Shown: positions 8,487-15,631 of the stretch, piece after piece | Layout of the letters: each line of letters opens with the position of its first letter | Numbering within the stretch: the first letter of the stretch is position 1 | Made by a program: the position numbers and the translations under genes | The notes under the pieces: generated by a model | What the model was told of the DNA's origin: nothing | Databases searched by the model: none | What the model saw: the letters and a program-made list of their open reading frames with translations, nothing else | NCBI RefSeq assembly: GCF_963676685.1 | Contig: NC_092348.1 | Coordinates: 67,394,001-67,458,000 of the forward strand | Length of the DNA stretch: 64,000 bases | Reading direction: 5' to 3' | DNA from: Mytilus edulis | Taxonomy: Eukaryota

Positions 8487-8802
8487 TTTATAAAATTCAT
8501 CAAGCATGCAAAGTTGCGACCCGCCTCAGACCACACGTGTATATGTGTGTGTGTGGGGGGGGGGGGGGGGGGGGGGGCTTATCCCGAAATCCCGGGCTTA
8601 TAAACAGGTCCCGAATTTAAAGAAATTTAAATCCTGACATCCTGACGAAATTCGAAAAAAAAGAATCCAGGATCCATCCCGAAATCCCGAGCTTAATTAA
8701 AAACACCCGATCCGGAGTACCGATGAAGGTCCACCCCACCCCCTCTGCCACGTGTGGCAGAGGCGGATTTTTTGGTGGGGCATTGACTCCCATTTGTGAA
8801 GA

Positions 8803-9240
8803 AAGGAGTAGGTCCGGTAAGACCCCTTTTTGGCCCAAAAATATAGCAGTTTTACAAAATTGTTAAAATGTAAACGTTTAGTTATTTATTGGACAGTAGA
8901 ATGCTTCTGCTACATAAATATGGGCTGTTTTTTACAATACAATGCACATATATCGGGTACTAGCCCCATTAAGTCATGCTAAATTACTGAAATCTTCACA
9001 ATTCTAGCATTTTAGTTAAATTTTAGACGGTTTTCGTGTAAAACGAAAGTGGCCGCATTCGTGTTCATCCTTAATATTGAAATGTAAGTCGTATTTTATG
9101 ATAATTACATAACATATATAAAGGTTGAGGATGAACACGGATGCGGCCACTTTCATTTTTGACAAAAATCATCTGAAAAGTGACATTTTTCGGCATATTT
9201 GGTAGATTTTTCATATATAAGCTTGAATCTGAGCGTTTGG
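8803..9240. repeat. Partial copy of a dispersed DNA-element family (also nested copies at ~24130-24893)
   Basis: AAGGAGTAGGTCCGGTAAG start, near-identical to 24315-24740; internal inverted pair AAAGTGGCCGCATTCGTGTTCATCCT / AGGATGAACACGGATGCGGCCACTTT. Confidence 0.6.
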
Positions 9241-9422
9241 GGAGGTTGTATCATGGTTTGAACTACTTTGTTGCTAAGTTTGGAGCCTCATATATAAAAC
9301 AAAGTCAATTAAATCTCACACAGAAATATAATACATCGCTCGACAATTTTTTAAAAGAAAACGTCAAGTTATTCTCATAATATAAAATAAAAAGGTAATT
9401 GAAGCTTTAGAACACAGATTAA

Positions 9423-9813
9423 TATGGTGGCCGGTTAAGGCCATTTCGCGTTTTCGCGTTTTCGCCCATCATATTATATAGGGCGAAAACGCGAAAACGC
9501 GAAATCGCGAAGTCGAAAACGCGAAAACGCGAAGTCGAAAACGCGAAAACGCGAAGTCGAAAACGCGAAAACGCGAAATATTTTTTCTTTCCGATTTCGC
9601 GTTTTCGACTTCGCGTTTTCGACTTCGCGTTTTCGCGTTTTCGCGTTTTCGACTTCGCGATTTCGCGTTTTCGCCTTTTCGCGTTTTCGCCTTTTCGCGT
9701 TTTCGCGATTTCGCGTTTTCGCCTTTTCGCGATTTCGCCTTTTCGCGTTTTCGCGATTTCGCGATTTCGCCTTTTCGCGTTTTCGCGATTTCGCGTTTTC
9801 GCCTTTTCGCCTT
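9423..9813 (-). repeat. CGCGAAAA-family fold-back terminal module, copy 1
   Basis: 8-mer variants CGCGAAAA/CGCGAAAT/GGCGAAAA and CGCGAAGTCGAAAA in alternating-orientation blocks. Confidence 0.9.
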
Positions 9814-9868
9814 AAATTATAGGTATATTGATCCAATATCCACCCGTTTATAGTATGGATCACATTTC

Positions 9869-10367
9869 TATGGTGGCCGGTTAAGGCCATTTCGCGTTTT
9901 CGCGTTTTCGCGTTTTCGCCCATCATATTATATAGGGCGAAAACGCGAAAACGCGAAATCGCGAAGTCGAAAACGCGAAAACGCGAAGTCGAAAACGCGA
10001 AAACGCGAAAACGCGAAGTCGAAAACGCGAAAACGCGAAGTCGAAAACGCGAAAACGCGAAATTTTTTTTCTTTCCGATTTCGCGTTTTCGACTTCGCGT
10101 TTTCGCGTTTTCGACTTCGCGTTTTCGCGTTTTCGCGTTTTCGACTTCGCGATTTCGCGTTTTCGCCTTTTCGCGTTTTCGCCTTTTCGCCTTTTCGCGT
10201 TTTCGCGATTTCGCGTTTTCGCGTTTTCGCGTTTTCGCGATTTCGCGATTTCGCGATTTCGCGTTTTCGCGTTTTCGCGATTTCGCGTTTTCGCGTTTTC
10301 GCGATTTCGCGTTTTCGCGTTTTCGCGTTTTCGCGATTTCGCGTTTTCGCCTTTTCGCGATTTCGTG
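9869..10367 (-). repeat. CGCGAAAA-family fold-back terminal module, copy 2
   Basis: Same layout as copy 1, more units. Confidence 0.9.
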
Positions 10368-10462
10368 TTTTATATACCAATACATATTCTTAGTATTTGA
10401 CTTTATTTCATAATCTATTTTGTTCAATTAAATATTTTATCATAAATATTTGTTGTTTTTTA

Positions 10463-10610
10463 AGGTGTTTCGGTTAAGGTTTAACTACCAAGGCTTTTCC
10501 TCATCAGGTATCCCAAGCCTCTAACTAATAAAATAATCAGTTTCAAAGTAAAGTTCAAAGCATCCATACGCATAGAATTTAAAAATTCTGCATACCGGGA
10601 TACGACACCT
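10463..10610 (-). ncRNA. Type III hammerhead ribozyme (predicted)
   Basis: Minus strand: AGGUGU-C cut GUAUCCC ...long loop I... GGGAUAC-CUGAUGA-GG...CC-GAAACACCU; stem III AGGUGU/ACACCU, stem I GUAUCCC/GGGAUAC, GUC triplet; possible loop-loop pairing AGGCUU/AAGCCU; stem II is short. Confidence 0.78.
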
Positions 10611-10712
10611 GGTAACTTTGTATTGATGTATTGTATTCTAAATTAAATCAGTTTATGATTTGATATAACCATTGTCTTTTATGTTGTGATTTATCCTATA
10701 ACTTGGTTTATC

Positions 10713-11345
10713 CTATAACTTGGAGGATGTAAGTAGATCCTTCAAGTTTTTGTGTCTTTTATATGCTATGATCGGAGGTTTTGGAAACATGGTTTTTGTG
10801 CTATCATTTTGTTCAATTAGGTGCCAATGTTTTTTAATTGCTTTATTTAGTCCATTGAAGGAAGGATTAAATTTGGTGGCTAAAACAAATGGAGGCATTG
10901 CTCTTTTGTTTTTAAGCTTGTACCTTAGACAATCTTTTCTTTCCTTATGAAGTGCATTTGTTATAATGGGGTTGATATCTTTTTCCGAGTATCCCCTTTG
11001 GAGAAGTTTTGTTTTAAAAGTTTCAATTTCTTTTAGTGTATCTTTTATGCATTTTTCTACCTAGTTCGGCAAAATCTCGTAAGAGATTTTGTTTTGTTTA
11101 ATGTATTTTACATCAGGACTGGGAATAAATTTTAATCCCTTTGCAAGAACTAATATTTCATAGTTTGTGAGATTCTCACGTGAAAACACTTCTATATAGT
11201 TTAAAGCTTTTTTTACATTTTCATGAAAGTGTTTTGTGCGTTTAAGATGGCCTTTGTTATTATTATGTATACGGAGTTTACTTTTGTATTTTATTAATCG
11301 TTTTTTCTTATCCCTTTTTCTGAGAGATCTTTTTCTATTACTCAT
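10713..11345 (-). pseudogene. Internally deleted Penelope-like reverse transcriptase ORF (N-terminus fused to thumb/C-terminus)
   Basis: N-terminal NLTNYEILVLAKGLKFIPSP and (after a CAAAA duplication frameshift) LLRDFAELGRKM joined near 11049 to FKTKLLQRGY...KKHWHLI...PPIIAYKRHKNLKDLLTSSKL*; RT core absent. Confidence 0.8.
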
Positions 11346-11583
11346 AGTAATTTATTTGTATAAATTTGTTTTGTGACAAAACTATTTTGTTTGTTTGTAT
11401 AATTATTTCAACTCTAATTGAGAGATGAAATGAATATATATGAACTTCAACTCTATTTGAGAGATGAAATGTATTTTATTAATTCTACTCTATTTGAGAG
11501 ATGAATTGATTTGTATTTTGTTTAAATCTATTTCAAAAATTATACATTGTATATGTAAACTCTGTTGAAGTGTTTGTTCACTT

Positions 11584-11724
11584 GTATCCCGGTATGCAGA
11601 ATTTTTAAATTCTGTGCGTATGGATGCTTTGAACTTTACTTTGAAACTGATTATTTTATTAGTTAGAGGCTTGGGATACCTGATGAGGAAAAGCCTTGGT
11701 AGTTAAACCTTAACCGAAACACCT
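11584..11724 (+). ncRNA. 3' cleavage-product copy of the type III hammerhead (lacks 5' strand of stem III and GUC)
   Basis: Homology to 10603-10463 begins at GTATCCC (11584), preceded by unrelated TTCACTT instead of AGGTGTC. Confidence 0.75.
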
Positions 11725-11816
11725 TAAAAAACAACAAATATTTATGATAAAATATTGAATTGAACAAAATAGATTATGAAATAAAGTCAAATACTAAGAA
11801 TATGTATTGGTATATA

Positions 11817-12374
11817 AAACACGAAATCGCGAAAAGGCGAAAACGCGAAATCGCGAAAACGCGAAAACGCGAAAACGCGAAATCGCGAAAACGCGAAAAC
11901 GCGAAATCGCGAAAACGCGAAAACGCGAAATCGCGAAAACGCGAAATCGCGAAAACGCGAAAACGCGAAATCGCGAAAACGCGAAATCGCGAAATCGCGA
12001 AAACGCGAAATCGCGAAAACGCGAAATCGCGAAAACGCGAAATCGCGAAAACGCGAAAAGGCGAAAACGCGAAAAGGCGAAAACGCGAAATCGCGAAGTC
12101 GAAAACGCGAAAACGCGAAAACGCGAAGTCGAAAACGCGAAAACGCGAAGTCGAAAACGCGAAATCGGAAAGAAAAAATATTTCGCGTTTTCGCGTTTTC
12201 GACTTCGCGTTTTCGCGTTTTCGACTTCGCGTTTTCGCGTTTTCGCGTTTTCGACTTCGCGTTTTCGCGTTTTCGACTTCGCGATTTCGCGTTTTCGCGT
12301 TTTCGCCCTATATAATATGATGGGCGAAAACGCGAAAACGCGAAAACGCGAAATGGCCTTAACCGGCCACCATA
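11817..12374 (+). repeat. CGCGAAAA-family fold-back terminal module, copy 3
   Basis: Longest of the four copies; ends GGCCTTAACCGGCCACCATA. Confidence 0.9.
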
Positions 12375-12380
12375 CATTTC

Positions 12381-12464
12381 CGACCTTACATTGATTACGT
12401 GCTACGTGTACAATGTTTCGAGTTCTTTCGGAATTATATTCCAGGTAACTCTCTTCAGAGGTCG
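12381..12464 (-). ncRNA. Type I hammerhead ribozyme (inverted copy)
   Basis: Reverse complement of 13490-13573 with all core nucleotides and stems intact. Confidence 0.85.
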
Positions 12465-12484
12465 TCCGTTTTATTTTTATTTTA

Positions 12485-13214
12485 TATAGCTATATACCAA
12501 CATATAAATAAAATTCTAAACATCTTTCCACACAAAAACAAAATATTATTTCATAAACGTATGAAGGATGATGGATATATTTTATTTCAAGGTACTACGG
12601 AAGAAGTTAAACTTCTTTTCGAAATAGCAAACACAAACCACAACCTACTGCAATTTACTTATGAAATTGACAGACAAAGTTTGAAATTTCTAGACTTAGA
12701 AACGTATAAAGGACAGAGATTTCAAAAAGAAAATATCTTAGATATTAGATGTTTCACAAAACCAACTGAAAAATTCCAATATCTACACCAAAATTCTAAC
12801 CACGCTAAAAGTTGTTTTAAATCCTTTATTAAAGGTGAAGGAATACGAATTCTTAGAAATACCTCTGATCCTGACAATTTTAATGAAAGAATAAACTTAT
12901 TTACAGAAAAATTAATACAAAGAGGTTACAAAATCGCTTTTGTAAATAAAATATTAAGAAATATTTCCCATACAGAAAGATTAAACAAATTAACAAACAA
13001 AGAAACAAGAATAAACAAAAACACAGATAACTATAATATATCTTTCATAACACAATACCACGCTAATGCGGAAAATTTACAAACCATTATAAGAAAACAT
13101 TGGCATTTAATTCAAGACAACCCACAGTTCAAAAATCTCTTTGATAAAAAACCCACAATAGCATTCAAAAGAAACAGGAACATTGGGGAAATCGTTAAGA
13201 AACACTTGAAATAA
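12485..13214 (+). CDS. 5'-truncated Penelope-like reverse transcriptase (end of motif B', motifs C-E, thumb), open frame, no GIY-YIG domain
   Basis: FHKRMKDDGYILF (motif C), LQFTYE, LKFLDL, FTKPTEKFQYLHQNSNH, FIKGEGIRILRNTS, KLIQRGY, PTIAFKRNRNIGEIV then stop; the first ~29 codons of the ORF-track call 12399-13214 are just the inverted ribozyme arm. Confidence 0.85.
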
Positions 13215-13489
13215 ATCAATGTCTCCCAATAGAAATTAATTAGACAGTTATACTAAAACCAAAGGAAGGTGCGTTGACAATGAAAAATGCATATTGAAAC
13301 GTATCTTAAACAATAACCAAAACCAGTTATCCATACGTTGATAAAACGAACAATAATAAATAAAAGGTACAATAATAAATAAAATGTACAAAATAATAAA
13401 CAAACAAACATTTAAAAATAAAAATAAAAATAAAAATAAAAAATAAAAATAATAATAATAATAAAAATAAAAAATAAAAATAAAACGGA

Positions 13490-13573
13490 CGACCTCTGAA
13501 GAGAGTTACCTGGAATATAATTCCGAAAGAACTCGAAACATTGTACACGTAGCACGTAATCAATGTAAGGTCG
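13490..13573 (+). ncRNA. Type I hammerhead ribozyme (predicted)
   Basis: CGACCU-CUGAAGA-GAGUU...AACUC-GAA-ACAUUG...CAAUGU-A cut AGGUCG; stems I (6 bp), II (5 bp), III (6 bp); GUA triplet, cleavage after 13567. Confidence 0.88.
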
Positions 13574-13628
13574 GAAATGTGATCCATACTATAAACGGGT
13601 GGATATTGGATCAATATACCTATAATTT

Positions 13629-14051
13629 AAGGCGAAAAGGCGAAAACGCGAAATCGCGAAAACGCGAAAAGGCGAAATCGCGAAATCGCGAAAACGCGAA
13701 AAGGCGAAATCGCGAAAAGGCGAAAACGCGAAATCGCGAAAACGCGAAAACGCGAAATCGCGAAAACGCGAAAAGGCGAAAACGCGAAATCGCGAAGTCG
13801 AAAACGCGAAAACGCGAAAACTCGAAGTCGAAAACGCGAAATCGGAAAGAAAAAATATTTCGCGTTTTCGCGTTTTCGACTTCGCGTTTTCGCGTTTTCG
13901 ACTTCGCGTTTTCGCGTTTTCGCGTTTTCGACTTCGCGTTTTCGCGTTTTCGACTTCGCGATTTCGCGTTTTCGCGTTTTCGCCCTATATAATATGATGG
14001 GCGAAAACGCGAAAACGCGAAAACGCGAAATGGCCTTAACCGGCCACCATA
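13629..14051 (+). repeat. CGCGAAAA-family fold-back terminal module, copy 4
   Basis: Forward array, spacer TCGGAAAGAAAAAATAT, reverse array, loop CTATATAATATGAT, short forward array, terminal GGCC hairpin. Confidence 0.9.
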
Positions 14052-14189
14052 GATTAAAGTGTAATTTGGCATTTCTTAAGACAAGGGACGCTATAACTTC
14101 TAAAGAATAGTACTAAGTAAAAGCAGAGAGCACAAACACATTGGTTGCCCTGGGCTGCATGTTTTCTTTCCTTTGGTTGTGTTGTTGTC

Positions 14190-14632
14190 TCTTTGATACA
14201 TTCAATGGTTCTTCAAAAGAAAACTTTTGAATGTATTTCACATATGGTCCTTTGTTAAACTAAGTTCCTCGCTCGGCAGCCATCTTCGATTATTGTAACA
14301 ACACTTGGTCAGCACCTCATATAAGGAACATTCATGCCATGTTTGGTTTCATTCCATCATTCCATGCATTCAGTGGTTCTCTAAAAGAAGACATGTGTTT
14401 GTATTTTCCATAGAGTCCTCTGTTAAACGAAGTTCCCCGCTAGTGGCCATCTTGGATGATTGGTCGGCTTCAAAGAAACACCACGTGGTTAGCACCTCAT
14501 AAGGAACATTCATGCTTTGTTTAGTTTCATTCCATTCCATTCTGTGGTTCTCTAGAAGGAGTTCAAAATATAAAAAGTTAACGGCGACGATGGAACCAAG
14601 TGAATAGAAAACCTCACATGGCCCGAACTTAA
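14190..14632. mobile_element. Helentron/HINE-like element with tandem core repeats (second copy ~42360-42855)
   Basis: Repeated ATAAGGAACATTCATGC...CATTCAGTGGTTCTCTA units ending in a GACGACG tract; same family at 42360-42855. Confidence 0.55.
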
Positions 14633-15631
14633 AAAAGTCATTCATAACAACAAATAGCAGAAGAAATGAAAACGTTGACCGGTCTGTGAGTACGGAATAG
14701 TTCAACCTGTTCTGGATAAAATCCATAGGCCTGTACGAAATATGCTGACTTTTCATGAACCTCAGCAGAAATATAATCTGAGATTCTTGTATTTATTTCT
14801 TACAATAGAATTATAATAATACACGCAAGAGAATAAATTTCTTGCTTTGTTACTTTTCATGACATCTGTGTCTACGTCATAAAATCCGGATAATTTTATG
14901 TGGTGTATTAAATGTTAGTAATTATTTTCAAATTGTCATATGTTAACTTATATAAAATCAGAATAAATAAATTATAACTTATTAAACGAAATTATTCGTG
15001 AGAACCTGTGTTAAGAATATCACGTACTATATATATATATATTCCTGTGTCTCCTAAGAGGTAGAACGGCGAGGTAAGACATTTTCTAATGTAATATTCA
15101 GACCACTGTATGAGCTAAAGCTATTATTTCAATCTCATGTATATGATATTTACCGAGAGGTTGACCTTCAGTTGGCTACATGATGTAACTGAATAGTAAA
15201 ATCACAAAAATACTGAACTTAGAGGAAAATCAATTCGGAAAGTCCATAATCACATGGCAAAATCAAATAACAAAACGCATCAAAAACGAATGGACAAGAA
15301 CTGTCATGAATACCAGTTTTCCTAAGAATTAATTTGATAAAAGATCGAAGTCGAAGACGAATTGACAACAAACAGAAGAAAAATGGTAGTCTACAAAACA
15401 AAATGTAAAAAAGAAAAAACCCTCTACAAAAGATATCATGGTAGGAAATGCATGCACTGGAATATCCTATGAACTTTGAGTTGTATAGTCATATGCAGGC
15501 GTTGTTATAATGTTGCTGCATAGAAATGGAAAAATTACAATTGAGGAATCTGAAATCAAATCGTTCGCCTAAAGATTGTCATTAACTGACCCTCATTGCA
15601 TGATCATTTGCAAATTCAAGTCAAAACAACA

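What the first reader, a model, noticed from the sequence alone, without database searches (positions are those of the whole stretch)
9417..14057. Two-partner, endonuclease-less Penelope-like system with hammerhead ribozymes and one shared fold-back terminus
Seen: two different RT sequences (10713-11345 minus; 12485-13214 plus) whose alignable C-termini are clearly diverged. Each is followed in sense by a different hammerhead and a different spacer, yet both end in the same ~400-550 bp (CGCGAAAA)n module and terminus GGCCTTAACCGGCCACCATA. Each element has long inverted arms and a 6-bp target duplication, and one is nested in the other. Known: Penelope-like elements (PLEs) carry hammerheads and form inverted insertions, but interstitial ones normally encode GIY-YIG, and endonuclease-less ones (Athena/Coprina, Terminons) are mostly telomeric. 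Inference: a bipartite retroelement family whose members share a 3' cis-module recognised by common machinery and integrate interstitially with a nuclease supplied in trans.
Basis: partly seen in the sequence, partly recalled or inferred. Interest (0 to 1): 0.92.

Follow-up and report, generated by a model that had tools for sequence, protein, structure and literature searches.

The report
Fold-back transposons carrying dead Penelope elements
This stretch holds two nested copies of a small fold-back DNA transposon, each carrying a broken piece of a different endonuclease-less Penelope-like retroelement as passive cargo, so it is nested ordinary mobile elements and not a new two-partner retroelement system.

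Summary
One element (9423-14051, duplication GATTAA) contains a second (9869-12374, duplication CATTTC). Both end in the same 20-base inverted terminus and period-8 arrays. They carry two RT remnants about 39% identical, each followed by a real hammerhead.

The shared module is not a retroelement 3' end. Near-identical copies of both Penelope families elsewhere in the genome lack it; their homology stops exactly at the module border. The terminus occurs 245 times. Many occurrences are 110-410 bp solo fold-back MITEs with perfect 6-bp duplications and no retro content. Other shells carry LINE fragments or a native non-retro centre. About 20 shells share fixed internal junctions at 98-100% identity, and 10 of 10 share one arm mismatch, so each is copied whole.

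Best reading: a non-autonomous fold-back DNA transposon with TA..TA ends and 6-bp duplications (IS3EU/GingerRoot-like), moved in trans with dead cargo. No transposase was found.

The Penelope lineage does lack GIY-YIG: the ~650-aa ORF stops about 55 residues before that domain in relatives. One inverted arm begins exactly at the ribozyme cut site.

Two earlier follow-ups in this scan reached the same reading on other copies.

The parts
9417..9422 (.). Target-site duplication GATTAA, left copy, of the outer shell
14052..14057 (.). Target-site duplication GATTAA, right copy, of the outer shell
9423..9813 (-). Outer shell, left fold-back module: terminus 9423-9442, small hairpin, period-8 arrays around an asymmetric loop
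9814..9868 (-). Outer cargo: inverted 3' fragment of Penelope family A, first part. It is interrupted by the inner shell after the CATTTC at 9863-9868.
9869..10371 (-). Inner shell, left module (terminus 9869-9888). In sense orientation it lies 3' of the family B copy.
10372..11583 (-). Inner cargo: internally deleted Penelope family B copy. 5'UTR 11583-11346; ORF N-terminus 11345-11061; 1341-bp deletion junction near 11049; ORF C-terminus 10898-10713; 3'UTR with a type III hammerhead 10609-10464 (cut 10604|10603).
11584..11815 (+). Inner cargo: inverted 3' fragment of family B that starts exactly at the hammerhead cleavage site (G1.1 = 11584)
11816..12374 (+). Inner shell, right module (terminus 12355-12374)
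12375..12380 (.). Second copy of the CATTTC duplication made by the inner shell
12381..12470 (-). Outer cargo: remainder of the inverted family A 3' fragment, with an intact inverted copy of hammerhead A (12381-12464)
12484..13629 (+). Outer cargo: 5'-truncated Penelope family A copy. RT C-terminal remnant 12486-13214; 3'UTR; type I hammerhead 13490-13573 (cut after 13567); natural 3' end near 13628.
13630..14051 (+). Outer shell, right module (terminus 14032-14051)

Best explanation
Shown: the region is two copies, one inside the other, of a non-autonomous fold-back (MITE-like) transposon family. The family is defined by 20-bp-plus inverted termini that begin TA and end TA, subterminal period-8 arrays that are themselves fold-backs, and an invariable 6-bp target duplication. 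Each copy carries in its centre a dead fragment of a different endonuclease-less Penelope-like retroelement (PLE): family A is 5'-truncated and family B is internally deleted. Each PLE has its own hammerhead. Both PLE families exist independently, without the module.

Inferred: the shells are cut or copied and inserted as DNA by a transposase supplied in trans. The end and duplication signature fits IS3EU/GingerRoot. The retro cargo rides along passively. The inner shell simply landed in the PLE tail inside the outer shell's left arm.

Inferred, roughly even odds: the cargo first entered a fold-back element by reverse transcription primed from both DNA ends of a break at or near the palindrome centre. 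This would explain why retroelement 3' ends face outward at mirrored array positions, and why family B's inverted arm begins at the ribozyme cut site. The alternative is ordinary insertion followed by recruitment of internal sequence into the inverted repeats, as described for Galileo.
For: 1. The module is separable from the PLEs. Full-length family A copies (L013, L014) match the window only from 12484 to 13626-13629 and then run into unique DNA. Family B copies L034-L036 and L042 (98-99% identical) stop at the module border and have no terminus. The module-free full-length family B copy L042+L067 starts exactly at the arm boundary.

2. The terminus has 245 genomic hits at up to 1 mismatch (124 forward, 121 reverse, control 0) and 122 exact hits.

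3. Solo elements of 288-292 bp (L015, L016) have perfect 6-bp duplications and no retro content. Of 20 termini that had no exact-match partner in the listing, 13 proved to have a partner terminus 110-840 bp away, most of them 110-410 bp solos.

4. Other cargo occurs. L018 holds a LINE-like 3' fragment with mirrored arms. L022 holds a LINE fragment inside native fold-back sequence, and L056 has a native non-retro centre.

5. I tabulated 26 six-base target duplications from the copies examined, a few with one mismatch. They are A/T-rich at positions 3-5 and favour G at position 1, a weak target preference.

6. Shells of one type share the same internal junctions at 98-100% identity. One left/right arm mismatch (at 10573) is the same in 10 of 10 family B shells. 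The arms are therefore inherited, not remade at each insertion.

7. TA..TA termini and 6-bp duplications are the stated hallmarks of IS3EU/GingerRoot (PMC10045372).

8. Contigs from three other sequencing runs match the unique left flank and stop matching exactly at 9422. One of them runs on for 143 letters unlike the element. This suggests an empty-site allele.
Against: - No transposase or autonomous copy bearing these termini was found, so DNA-level mobilisation is inferred from architecture only.
- No excision footprint or verified empty site was read. The loose letters were not shown.
- Three of four retro-cargo types have retroelement 3' ends abutting the arrays on both sides in mirror image. 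Random nesting does not predict this, so RT involvement in forming the shells remains open.
- One shell (L021) still holds a nearly full-length RT with a single frameshift.
- The uninterrupted palindromic parent was not found (0 hits).
Confidence: 0.8

Rival explanations
1. The module plus terminus is a shared 3' cis-element of a retroelement family. RNAs ending in it are reverse-transcribed by PLE RT, with a nuclease supplied in trans, and the inverted arms are made anew at each insertion.
For: Two PLE families and their hammerheads lie directly upstream of the module. Family B's inverted arm starts at the ribozyme cut site, which is an RNA-level signature. PLE insertions in unique DNA also have an inverted partner copy.
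Against: Module-free PLE copies are the rule. Solo MITEs with no RT, hammerhead or PLE sequence have the same ends and duplication. LINE and non-retro cargo also occur. Arm boundaries and one arm mismatch are identical across copies. Both ends are precise inverted termini, which a 3'-anchored retrocopy would not produce.
Confidence: 0.07
2. The shells and their mobilisation are as in the best explanation, but the cargo entered by ordinary single insertion into the fold-back centre. The mirrored arms arose later, by recruitment of internal sequence into the inverted repeats through recombination or repair between arms, with no centre-break double priming.
For: TIR extension by inverted duplication of adjacent internal sequence is documented for the foldback-like transposon Galileo (PMC3573991). 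L022 shows a LINE fragment in the centre without arm extension. Family A's arm boundary (12470/13480) is not at its ribozyme cut site.
Against: Family B's arm begins exactly at the hammerhead cut site and abuts the exact natural 5' end of the PLE. Under DNA-level extension this would be a coincidence. Three independent cargoes share the geometry of two outward-facing 3' ends.
Confidence: 0.35
3. Assembly artefact: the nested inverted structure is a mis-join of repeats.
Against: Both elements have matching 6-bp duplications. Removing the inner one restores a perfect arm. More than 20 independent loci have the same architecture.
Confidence: 0.02

Closest known systems
Foldback-like DNA transposons (Drosophila FB, Galileo) and tandem-repeat-containing MITEs of bivalves
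   Same: Long, internally repetitive inverted arms; short solo derivatives; a variable centre; arms that can absorb internal sequence (PMC3573991); a fixed-length target duplication.
   Different: The duplication is 6 bp, not 7-9 bp. The ends and arrays are different. No transposase is known here. The centres are repeatedly occupied by retroelement 3' fragments in mirror image.
IS3EU/GingerRoot superfamily (non-autonomous members)
   Same: TA..TA termini and 6-bp target duplications (PMC10045372).
   Different: No IS3-like DDE transposase was linked to these termini. IS3-model hits in the genome (for example L072, 346 aa) lack similar ends.
Canonical EN+ Penelope-like elements (Penelope/Poseidon, Neptune, Nematis, Hydra)
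   Same: Collinear RT with the N-terminal conserved region (32% identity to an RVT_1 + GIY-YIG protein); a hammerhead in the 3' region; tandem and head-to-head insertions (PMC8557442).
   Different: The ORF stops before the GIY-YIG domain. Family B's hammerhead is type III with a 40-80 nt loop 1, not the minimal type I reported for PLEs (PMC4209133).
EN-minus PLEs Athena/Coprina and Terminons
   Same: No endonuclease domain.
   Different: These copies are interstitial, about 2.5 kb, with no telomeric repeats seen. In my sample they group as one clade beside C-terminal EN+ PLEs.
Non-LTR retrozymes
   Same: Hammerhead-delimited PLE-derived units; copies that begin exactly at cut sites.
   Different: The shells are not tandem hammerhead repeats, and their ends are DNA-transposon termini.

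Membership tests
Penelope-like elements | PLE-type reverse transcriptase with the conserved N-terminal region | tested here: met
   Family B has an RVT_1 hit at 34.6 bits against a cut-off of 29.6. Family A aligns collinearly at 32% identity with an RVT_1 + GIY-YIG protein. There are 496 homologues.
Penelope-like elements | Hammerhead ribozyme in the 3' region / pseudo-LTR | tested here: met
   Family A's minimum-free-energy fold is a canonical hammerhead. Family B shows covariation in helices I and III. Rfam models miss both.
Penelope-like elements | Tandem or inverted partial copies at insertions | tested here: met
   L013 has a head-to-head partner. L036 has a partial tandem.
Canonical EN+ PLE | C-terminal GIY-YIG endonuclease | tested here: not met
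   ORFs of 649-652 aa end at the linker. Pfam finds no GIY-YIG. No coding sequence follows the stop.
Naiad/Chlamys PLE | N-terminal GIY-YIG with a CxC linker | tested here: not met
   The ORF starts about 45 residues before the conserved N-terminal region. The 5'UTR is about 110-240 bp with no upstream ORF.
Athena/Coprina EN-minus PLE | Location at chromosome ends, adjacent to telomeric repeats | tested here: not met
   Copies lie interstitially on many chromosomes and are flanked by unique DNA.
Fold-back / MITE-type DNA transposon | Terminal inverted repeats with a fixed-length target duplication | tested here: met
   26 six-base duplications were tabulated, a few with one mismatch. The termini are exact.
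Fold-back / MITE-type DNA transposon | Short non-coding copies that share the ends | tested here: met
   L015, L016 and 13 further short copies.
Fold-back / MITE-type DNA transposon | Autonomous partner encoding a transposase with the same ends | tested here: inconclusive
   None was found among termini pairs up to 12 kb apart or near IS3-model hits. The search was not exhaustive.
IS3EU/GingerRoot | TA..TA termini and a 6-bp duplication | tested here: met
   The ends read TATGG...CCATA, and all duplications are 6 bp. The criterion is from PMC10045372.
IS3EU/GingerRoot | IS3-like DDE transposase | tested here: inconclusive
   IS3-model hits exist but are not linked to these ends.

The most novel reading that the evidence does not exclude
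Fold-back palindromes may act as landing pads for endonuclease-less retroelements. A break at the palindrome centre would expose two mirror-image 3' ends, and both would prime reverse transcription. For family B, one of the templates would be the ribozyme-cleaved 3' RNA fragment. The inserted spacer would stabilise the palindrome, and the fold-back's transposase would then spread the retro cargo as DNA. That would give PLEs that have lost their nuclease an indirect route to interstitial spread.
Probability: 0.3. Interest if true: 0.65.

Novelty: new member of a known kind. Interest (0 to 1): 0.35.

Why it matters
This result removes a tempting false lead, a supposed hybrid or bipartite retroelement class. 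It shows how a DNA-transposon shell can amplify dead retroelement fragments to dozens of near-identical copies, which will mislead automated repeat classification in mussel genomes.

Two side results have some value. First, there is a diverse, interstitial, endonuclease-less PLE clade in bivalves whose integration route is unexplained. Second, there is DNA-level evidence that hammerhead cleavage defines the 5' end of reverse-transcribed PLE RNA: arms and copies begin exactly at the cut site.

Tried and rejected
- Rfam with E-value thresholds, on the whole region and on each 3' region, gave only spurious microRNA and snoRNA hits on the array hairpins and no hammerhead.
- Pfam on the window's ORF fragments and on the 652-aa family A ORF gave nothing.
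- The search for an uninterrupted palindromic parent centre gave 0 hits.
- The transposase search failed. A 12-kb termini pair (L032) and a 3.4-kb pair (L055) hold no transposase. IS3-model hits have no similar ends.
- No target duplication could be identified for module-free PLE insertions.
Only the left flank was laid, so the joint test for an empty site could not be made.
- Two tree scripts returned no answer. The tree file was read afterwards. It is midpoint-rooted on a similarity-selected sample, with no reference sequences from the named PLE clades, so it does not assign the lineage to a clade.
- I considered a model in which the arms form at the DNA level by fold-back from a single element end. 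I rejected it for family B because the arm boundary coincides with the ribozyme cut site.
Full report
ANATOMY. Reading 8800-14800 and searching for the terminal 20-mer (4 hits, 0 expected) gives two elements. The outer one spans 9423-14051 and is flanked by GATTAA at 9417-9422 and 14052-14057. The inner one spans 9869-12374 and is flanked by CATTTC at 9863-9868 and 12375-12380. It sits inside the left arm of the outer element. Removing the inner element and one CATTTC makes the Penelope-derived part of the outer left arm identical to the right arm. The arms are long: 462-503 nt at 97% complementarity for the inner element and 274-281 nt at 91-96% for the outer. Each arm starts with the terminus, then a small hairpin, then period-8 arrays on both sides of an asymmetric loop, then more array.

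THE CARGO IS PENELOPE-LIKE AND HAS NO ENDONUCLEASE. A six-frame search of the window's own 1.37-Gb genome with the outer ORF remnant found seven 100%-identical copies that share the same truncation. It also found full-length copies with open frames of about 650 aa. L013 and L014 carry ORFs of 652 and 649 aa. The 652-aa protein has 496 homologues. Relatives above about 37% identity are 610-680 aa proteins from Mytilus, Pinctada and Saccostrea with no GIY-YIG annotation. More distant relatives at 27-35% identity are 740-950 aa and carry RVT_1 plus GIY-YIG.

The 652-aa ORF aligns collinearly with one such EN+ protein, P0057, from residue 172 to residue 736, and stops there. P0057's GIY-YIG domain lies at 792-874. 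The inner family's RT piece from L021 passes the RVT_1 cut-off. The two families are about 39% identical. In a FastTree of 99 proteins, the EN-less proteins of about 645 aa, including relatives of both window families, form one clade of 40 with support 0.985. That tree is midpoint-rooted on a similarity-selected sample and contains no named reference clades.

Both window copies are dead. The outer copy starts at about residue 409. The inner copy lacks 1341 bp of RT core, which is present in L021 and L023.

HAMMERHEADS. Rfam finds none. The outer 3'UTR nevertheless folds at its minimum free energy into a canonical type I hammerhead. It has a 6-bp helix I, an unpaired CUGAAGA core, an interrupted helix II, GAA, a helix III closed by the A-U pair, and an unpaired A at the cut site. 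It spans 13490-13573, with cleavage after 13567.

The inner element has a type III arrangement on the minus strand. Reading 5' to 3', it has a 4-bp helix III strand, the cut site after UC, a 7-bp helix I enclosing an 82-nt loop, CUGAUGA, helix II, GAAA, and the closing helix III strand. Across five related PLE families the core is invariant, while helix I and helix III change in a compensatory way: GUAUCCC/GGGAUAC, GUGCCC/GGGUAC and GUGCUC/GAGCAC in helix I, and GGUG/CACC against AGUG/CACU in helix III. The predicted cut lies between 10604 and 10603.

THE MODULE IS NOT PART OF EITHER PLE. Full-length family A copies match the window only from 12484 to 13626-13629. They then run into unique DNA after a short tail duplication and contain no terminus. 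Family B copies L034, L035, L036 and L042, at 98-99% identity, match up to 10371/11816, which is exactly the module border. They then continue with a 37-bp tail and variable flanks. A tail of 30-40 bp present at only some insertion ends is a described PLE feature (PMC8557442). The module-free full-length copy L042+L067 begins exactly where the inverted arm ends in the shells.

THE MODULE IS A FOLD-BACK MITE FAMILY.
- The terminus occurs 245 times at up to 1 mismatch, with a control count of 0. Exact matches number 122.
- L015 (292 bp) and L016 (288 bp) consist of terminus, hairpin, array, loop, array, hairpin and terminus. They have perfect duplications AGTAAA and CAATAC and no retro sequence.
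- I fetched 20 termini that had no exact-match partner in the listing. In 13 of them a partner terminus lies 110-840 bp away, and most of these are solos of 110-410 bp.
- L056 and L022 are older long fold-backs that share a native, non-retro internal sequence. L022 additionally holds a LINE fragment.
- L018 is a third young shell type. Its arms contain about 260 bp of a LINE-like 3'UTR. That LINE has at least 40 module-free relatives.

THE SHELLS ARE COPIED WHOLE. I examined about 20 shells. Eight are family A type and fourteen are family B type, counting deletion derivatives and two less-deleted copies. Nearly all have perfect 6-bp duplications, 98-100% identity and the same internal junctions. 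They differ mainly in array length. One position where the two arms differ (10573) has the same asymmetric state in 10 of 10 family B shells. The arms are therefore inherited and not regenerated at each insertion.

The 26 duplications I tabulated, a few with one mismatch, are A/T-rich at positions 3-5 and favour G at position 1. Precise inverted ends beginning TA and ending TA, together with a constant 6-bp duplication, match the published signature of IS3EU/GingerRoot (PMC10045372). I could not find a transposase with these ends. Mobilisation as DNA in trans is therefore an inference from architecture, though a strong one.

HOW THE CARGO GOT IN. This is inference. In three shell types, retroelement 3' ends face outward on both sides and meet the arrays at mirrored positions. 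In family B the inverted arm starts exactly at the hammerhead cut site (11584) and abuts the exact natural 5' end of the PLE. Elsewhere, unrelated PLE fragments also begin exactly at cut sites. This points to reverse transcription of ribozyme-cleaved RNA, not to a DNA-level duplication. The mirrored junctions suggest that both ends of a break at the palindrome centre primed synthesis.

The alternative is ordinary insertion followed by recruitment of internal sequence into the inverted repeats. This has a precedent in Galileo (PMC3573991), and L022 fits it. The uninterrupted palindromic parent was not found. Such palindromes are expected to be unstable or hard to assemble.

POPULATION HINT. Logan contigs from three other runs cover the unique left flank and end their match exactly at 9422. 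One contig continues for 143 letters unlike the element. This is consistent with an empty site.

COMPARISON AND VERDICT. The PLE parts are members of the PLE group that fail the endonuclease criterion. They are interstitial, unlike Athena and Coprina. The shell behaves like a foldback-type, IS3EU-like non-autonomous DNA transposon.

Two earlier follow-ups in this scan (s1-836508 and s1-832255) reached the same fold-back shell plus dead PLE reading on other copies. I tested their claims independently here. What this window adds:
- a shell nested within a shell;
- the LINE and native-centre shells;
- the inherited arm asymmetry;
- the exact match between the arm boundary and the natural PLE 5' end.

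Noticed in passing
window 8900-9240: An extremely abundant repeat, with summed contig depth of 1e5-4e6 in four runs. It includes a roughly 130-bp hairpin (9040-9160) that draws spurious microRNA hits. It is probably a very high-copy MITE unrelated to the finding.
   Followed up: no
L014 4260-4934 and 8419-9093 (minus strand): A 224-aa ORF with no Pfam match flanks a full-length family A PLE on both sides, within a 4159-bp direct repeat. It is unclear whether it belongs to the PLE array or to a host repeat.
   Followed up: partly
L035 about 2990 onward; L040 about 3090 onward (sense coordinates): PLE copies are followed directly by fragments of other PLE families that begin exactly at their hammerhead cut site. 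This pattern of 5' ends defined by the ribozyme recurs.
   Followed up: partly
L072 1201-2241: An intact 346-aa ORF matches the IS3 transposase model (about 70 bits, below the cut-off) and has D..D..E-like motifs. No inverted ends were recognisable within 1.2 kb. It may be an IS3EU/GingerRoot-type or domesticated integrase.
   Followed up: partly
window 11407-11516: Three tandem 37-bp repeats lie in the 5'UTR of PLE family B. Copy L035 starts inside them.
   Followed up: no
genome-wide: There are many tandem arrays of intact EN-less PLE ORFs (657-688 aa) with periods of about 2.6-4.3 kb, for example on C7 near 17.92-17.95 Mb and on C8 near 63.78 and 78.28 Mb. Some arrays meet head-to-head.
   Followed up: no
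L018 787-823: Between the LINE's hexamer-repeat tail and the module lie about 37 bp that are absent from the other LINE copies. This could be a transduced flank or native fold-back sequence.
   Followed up: partly
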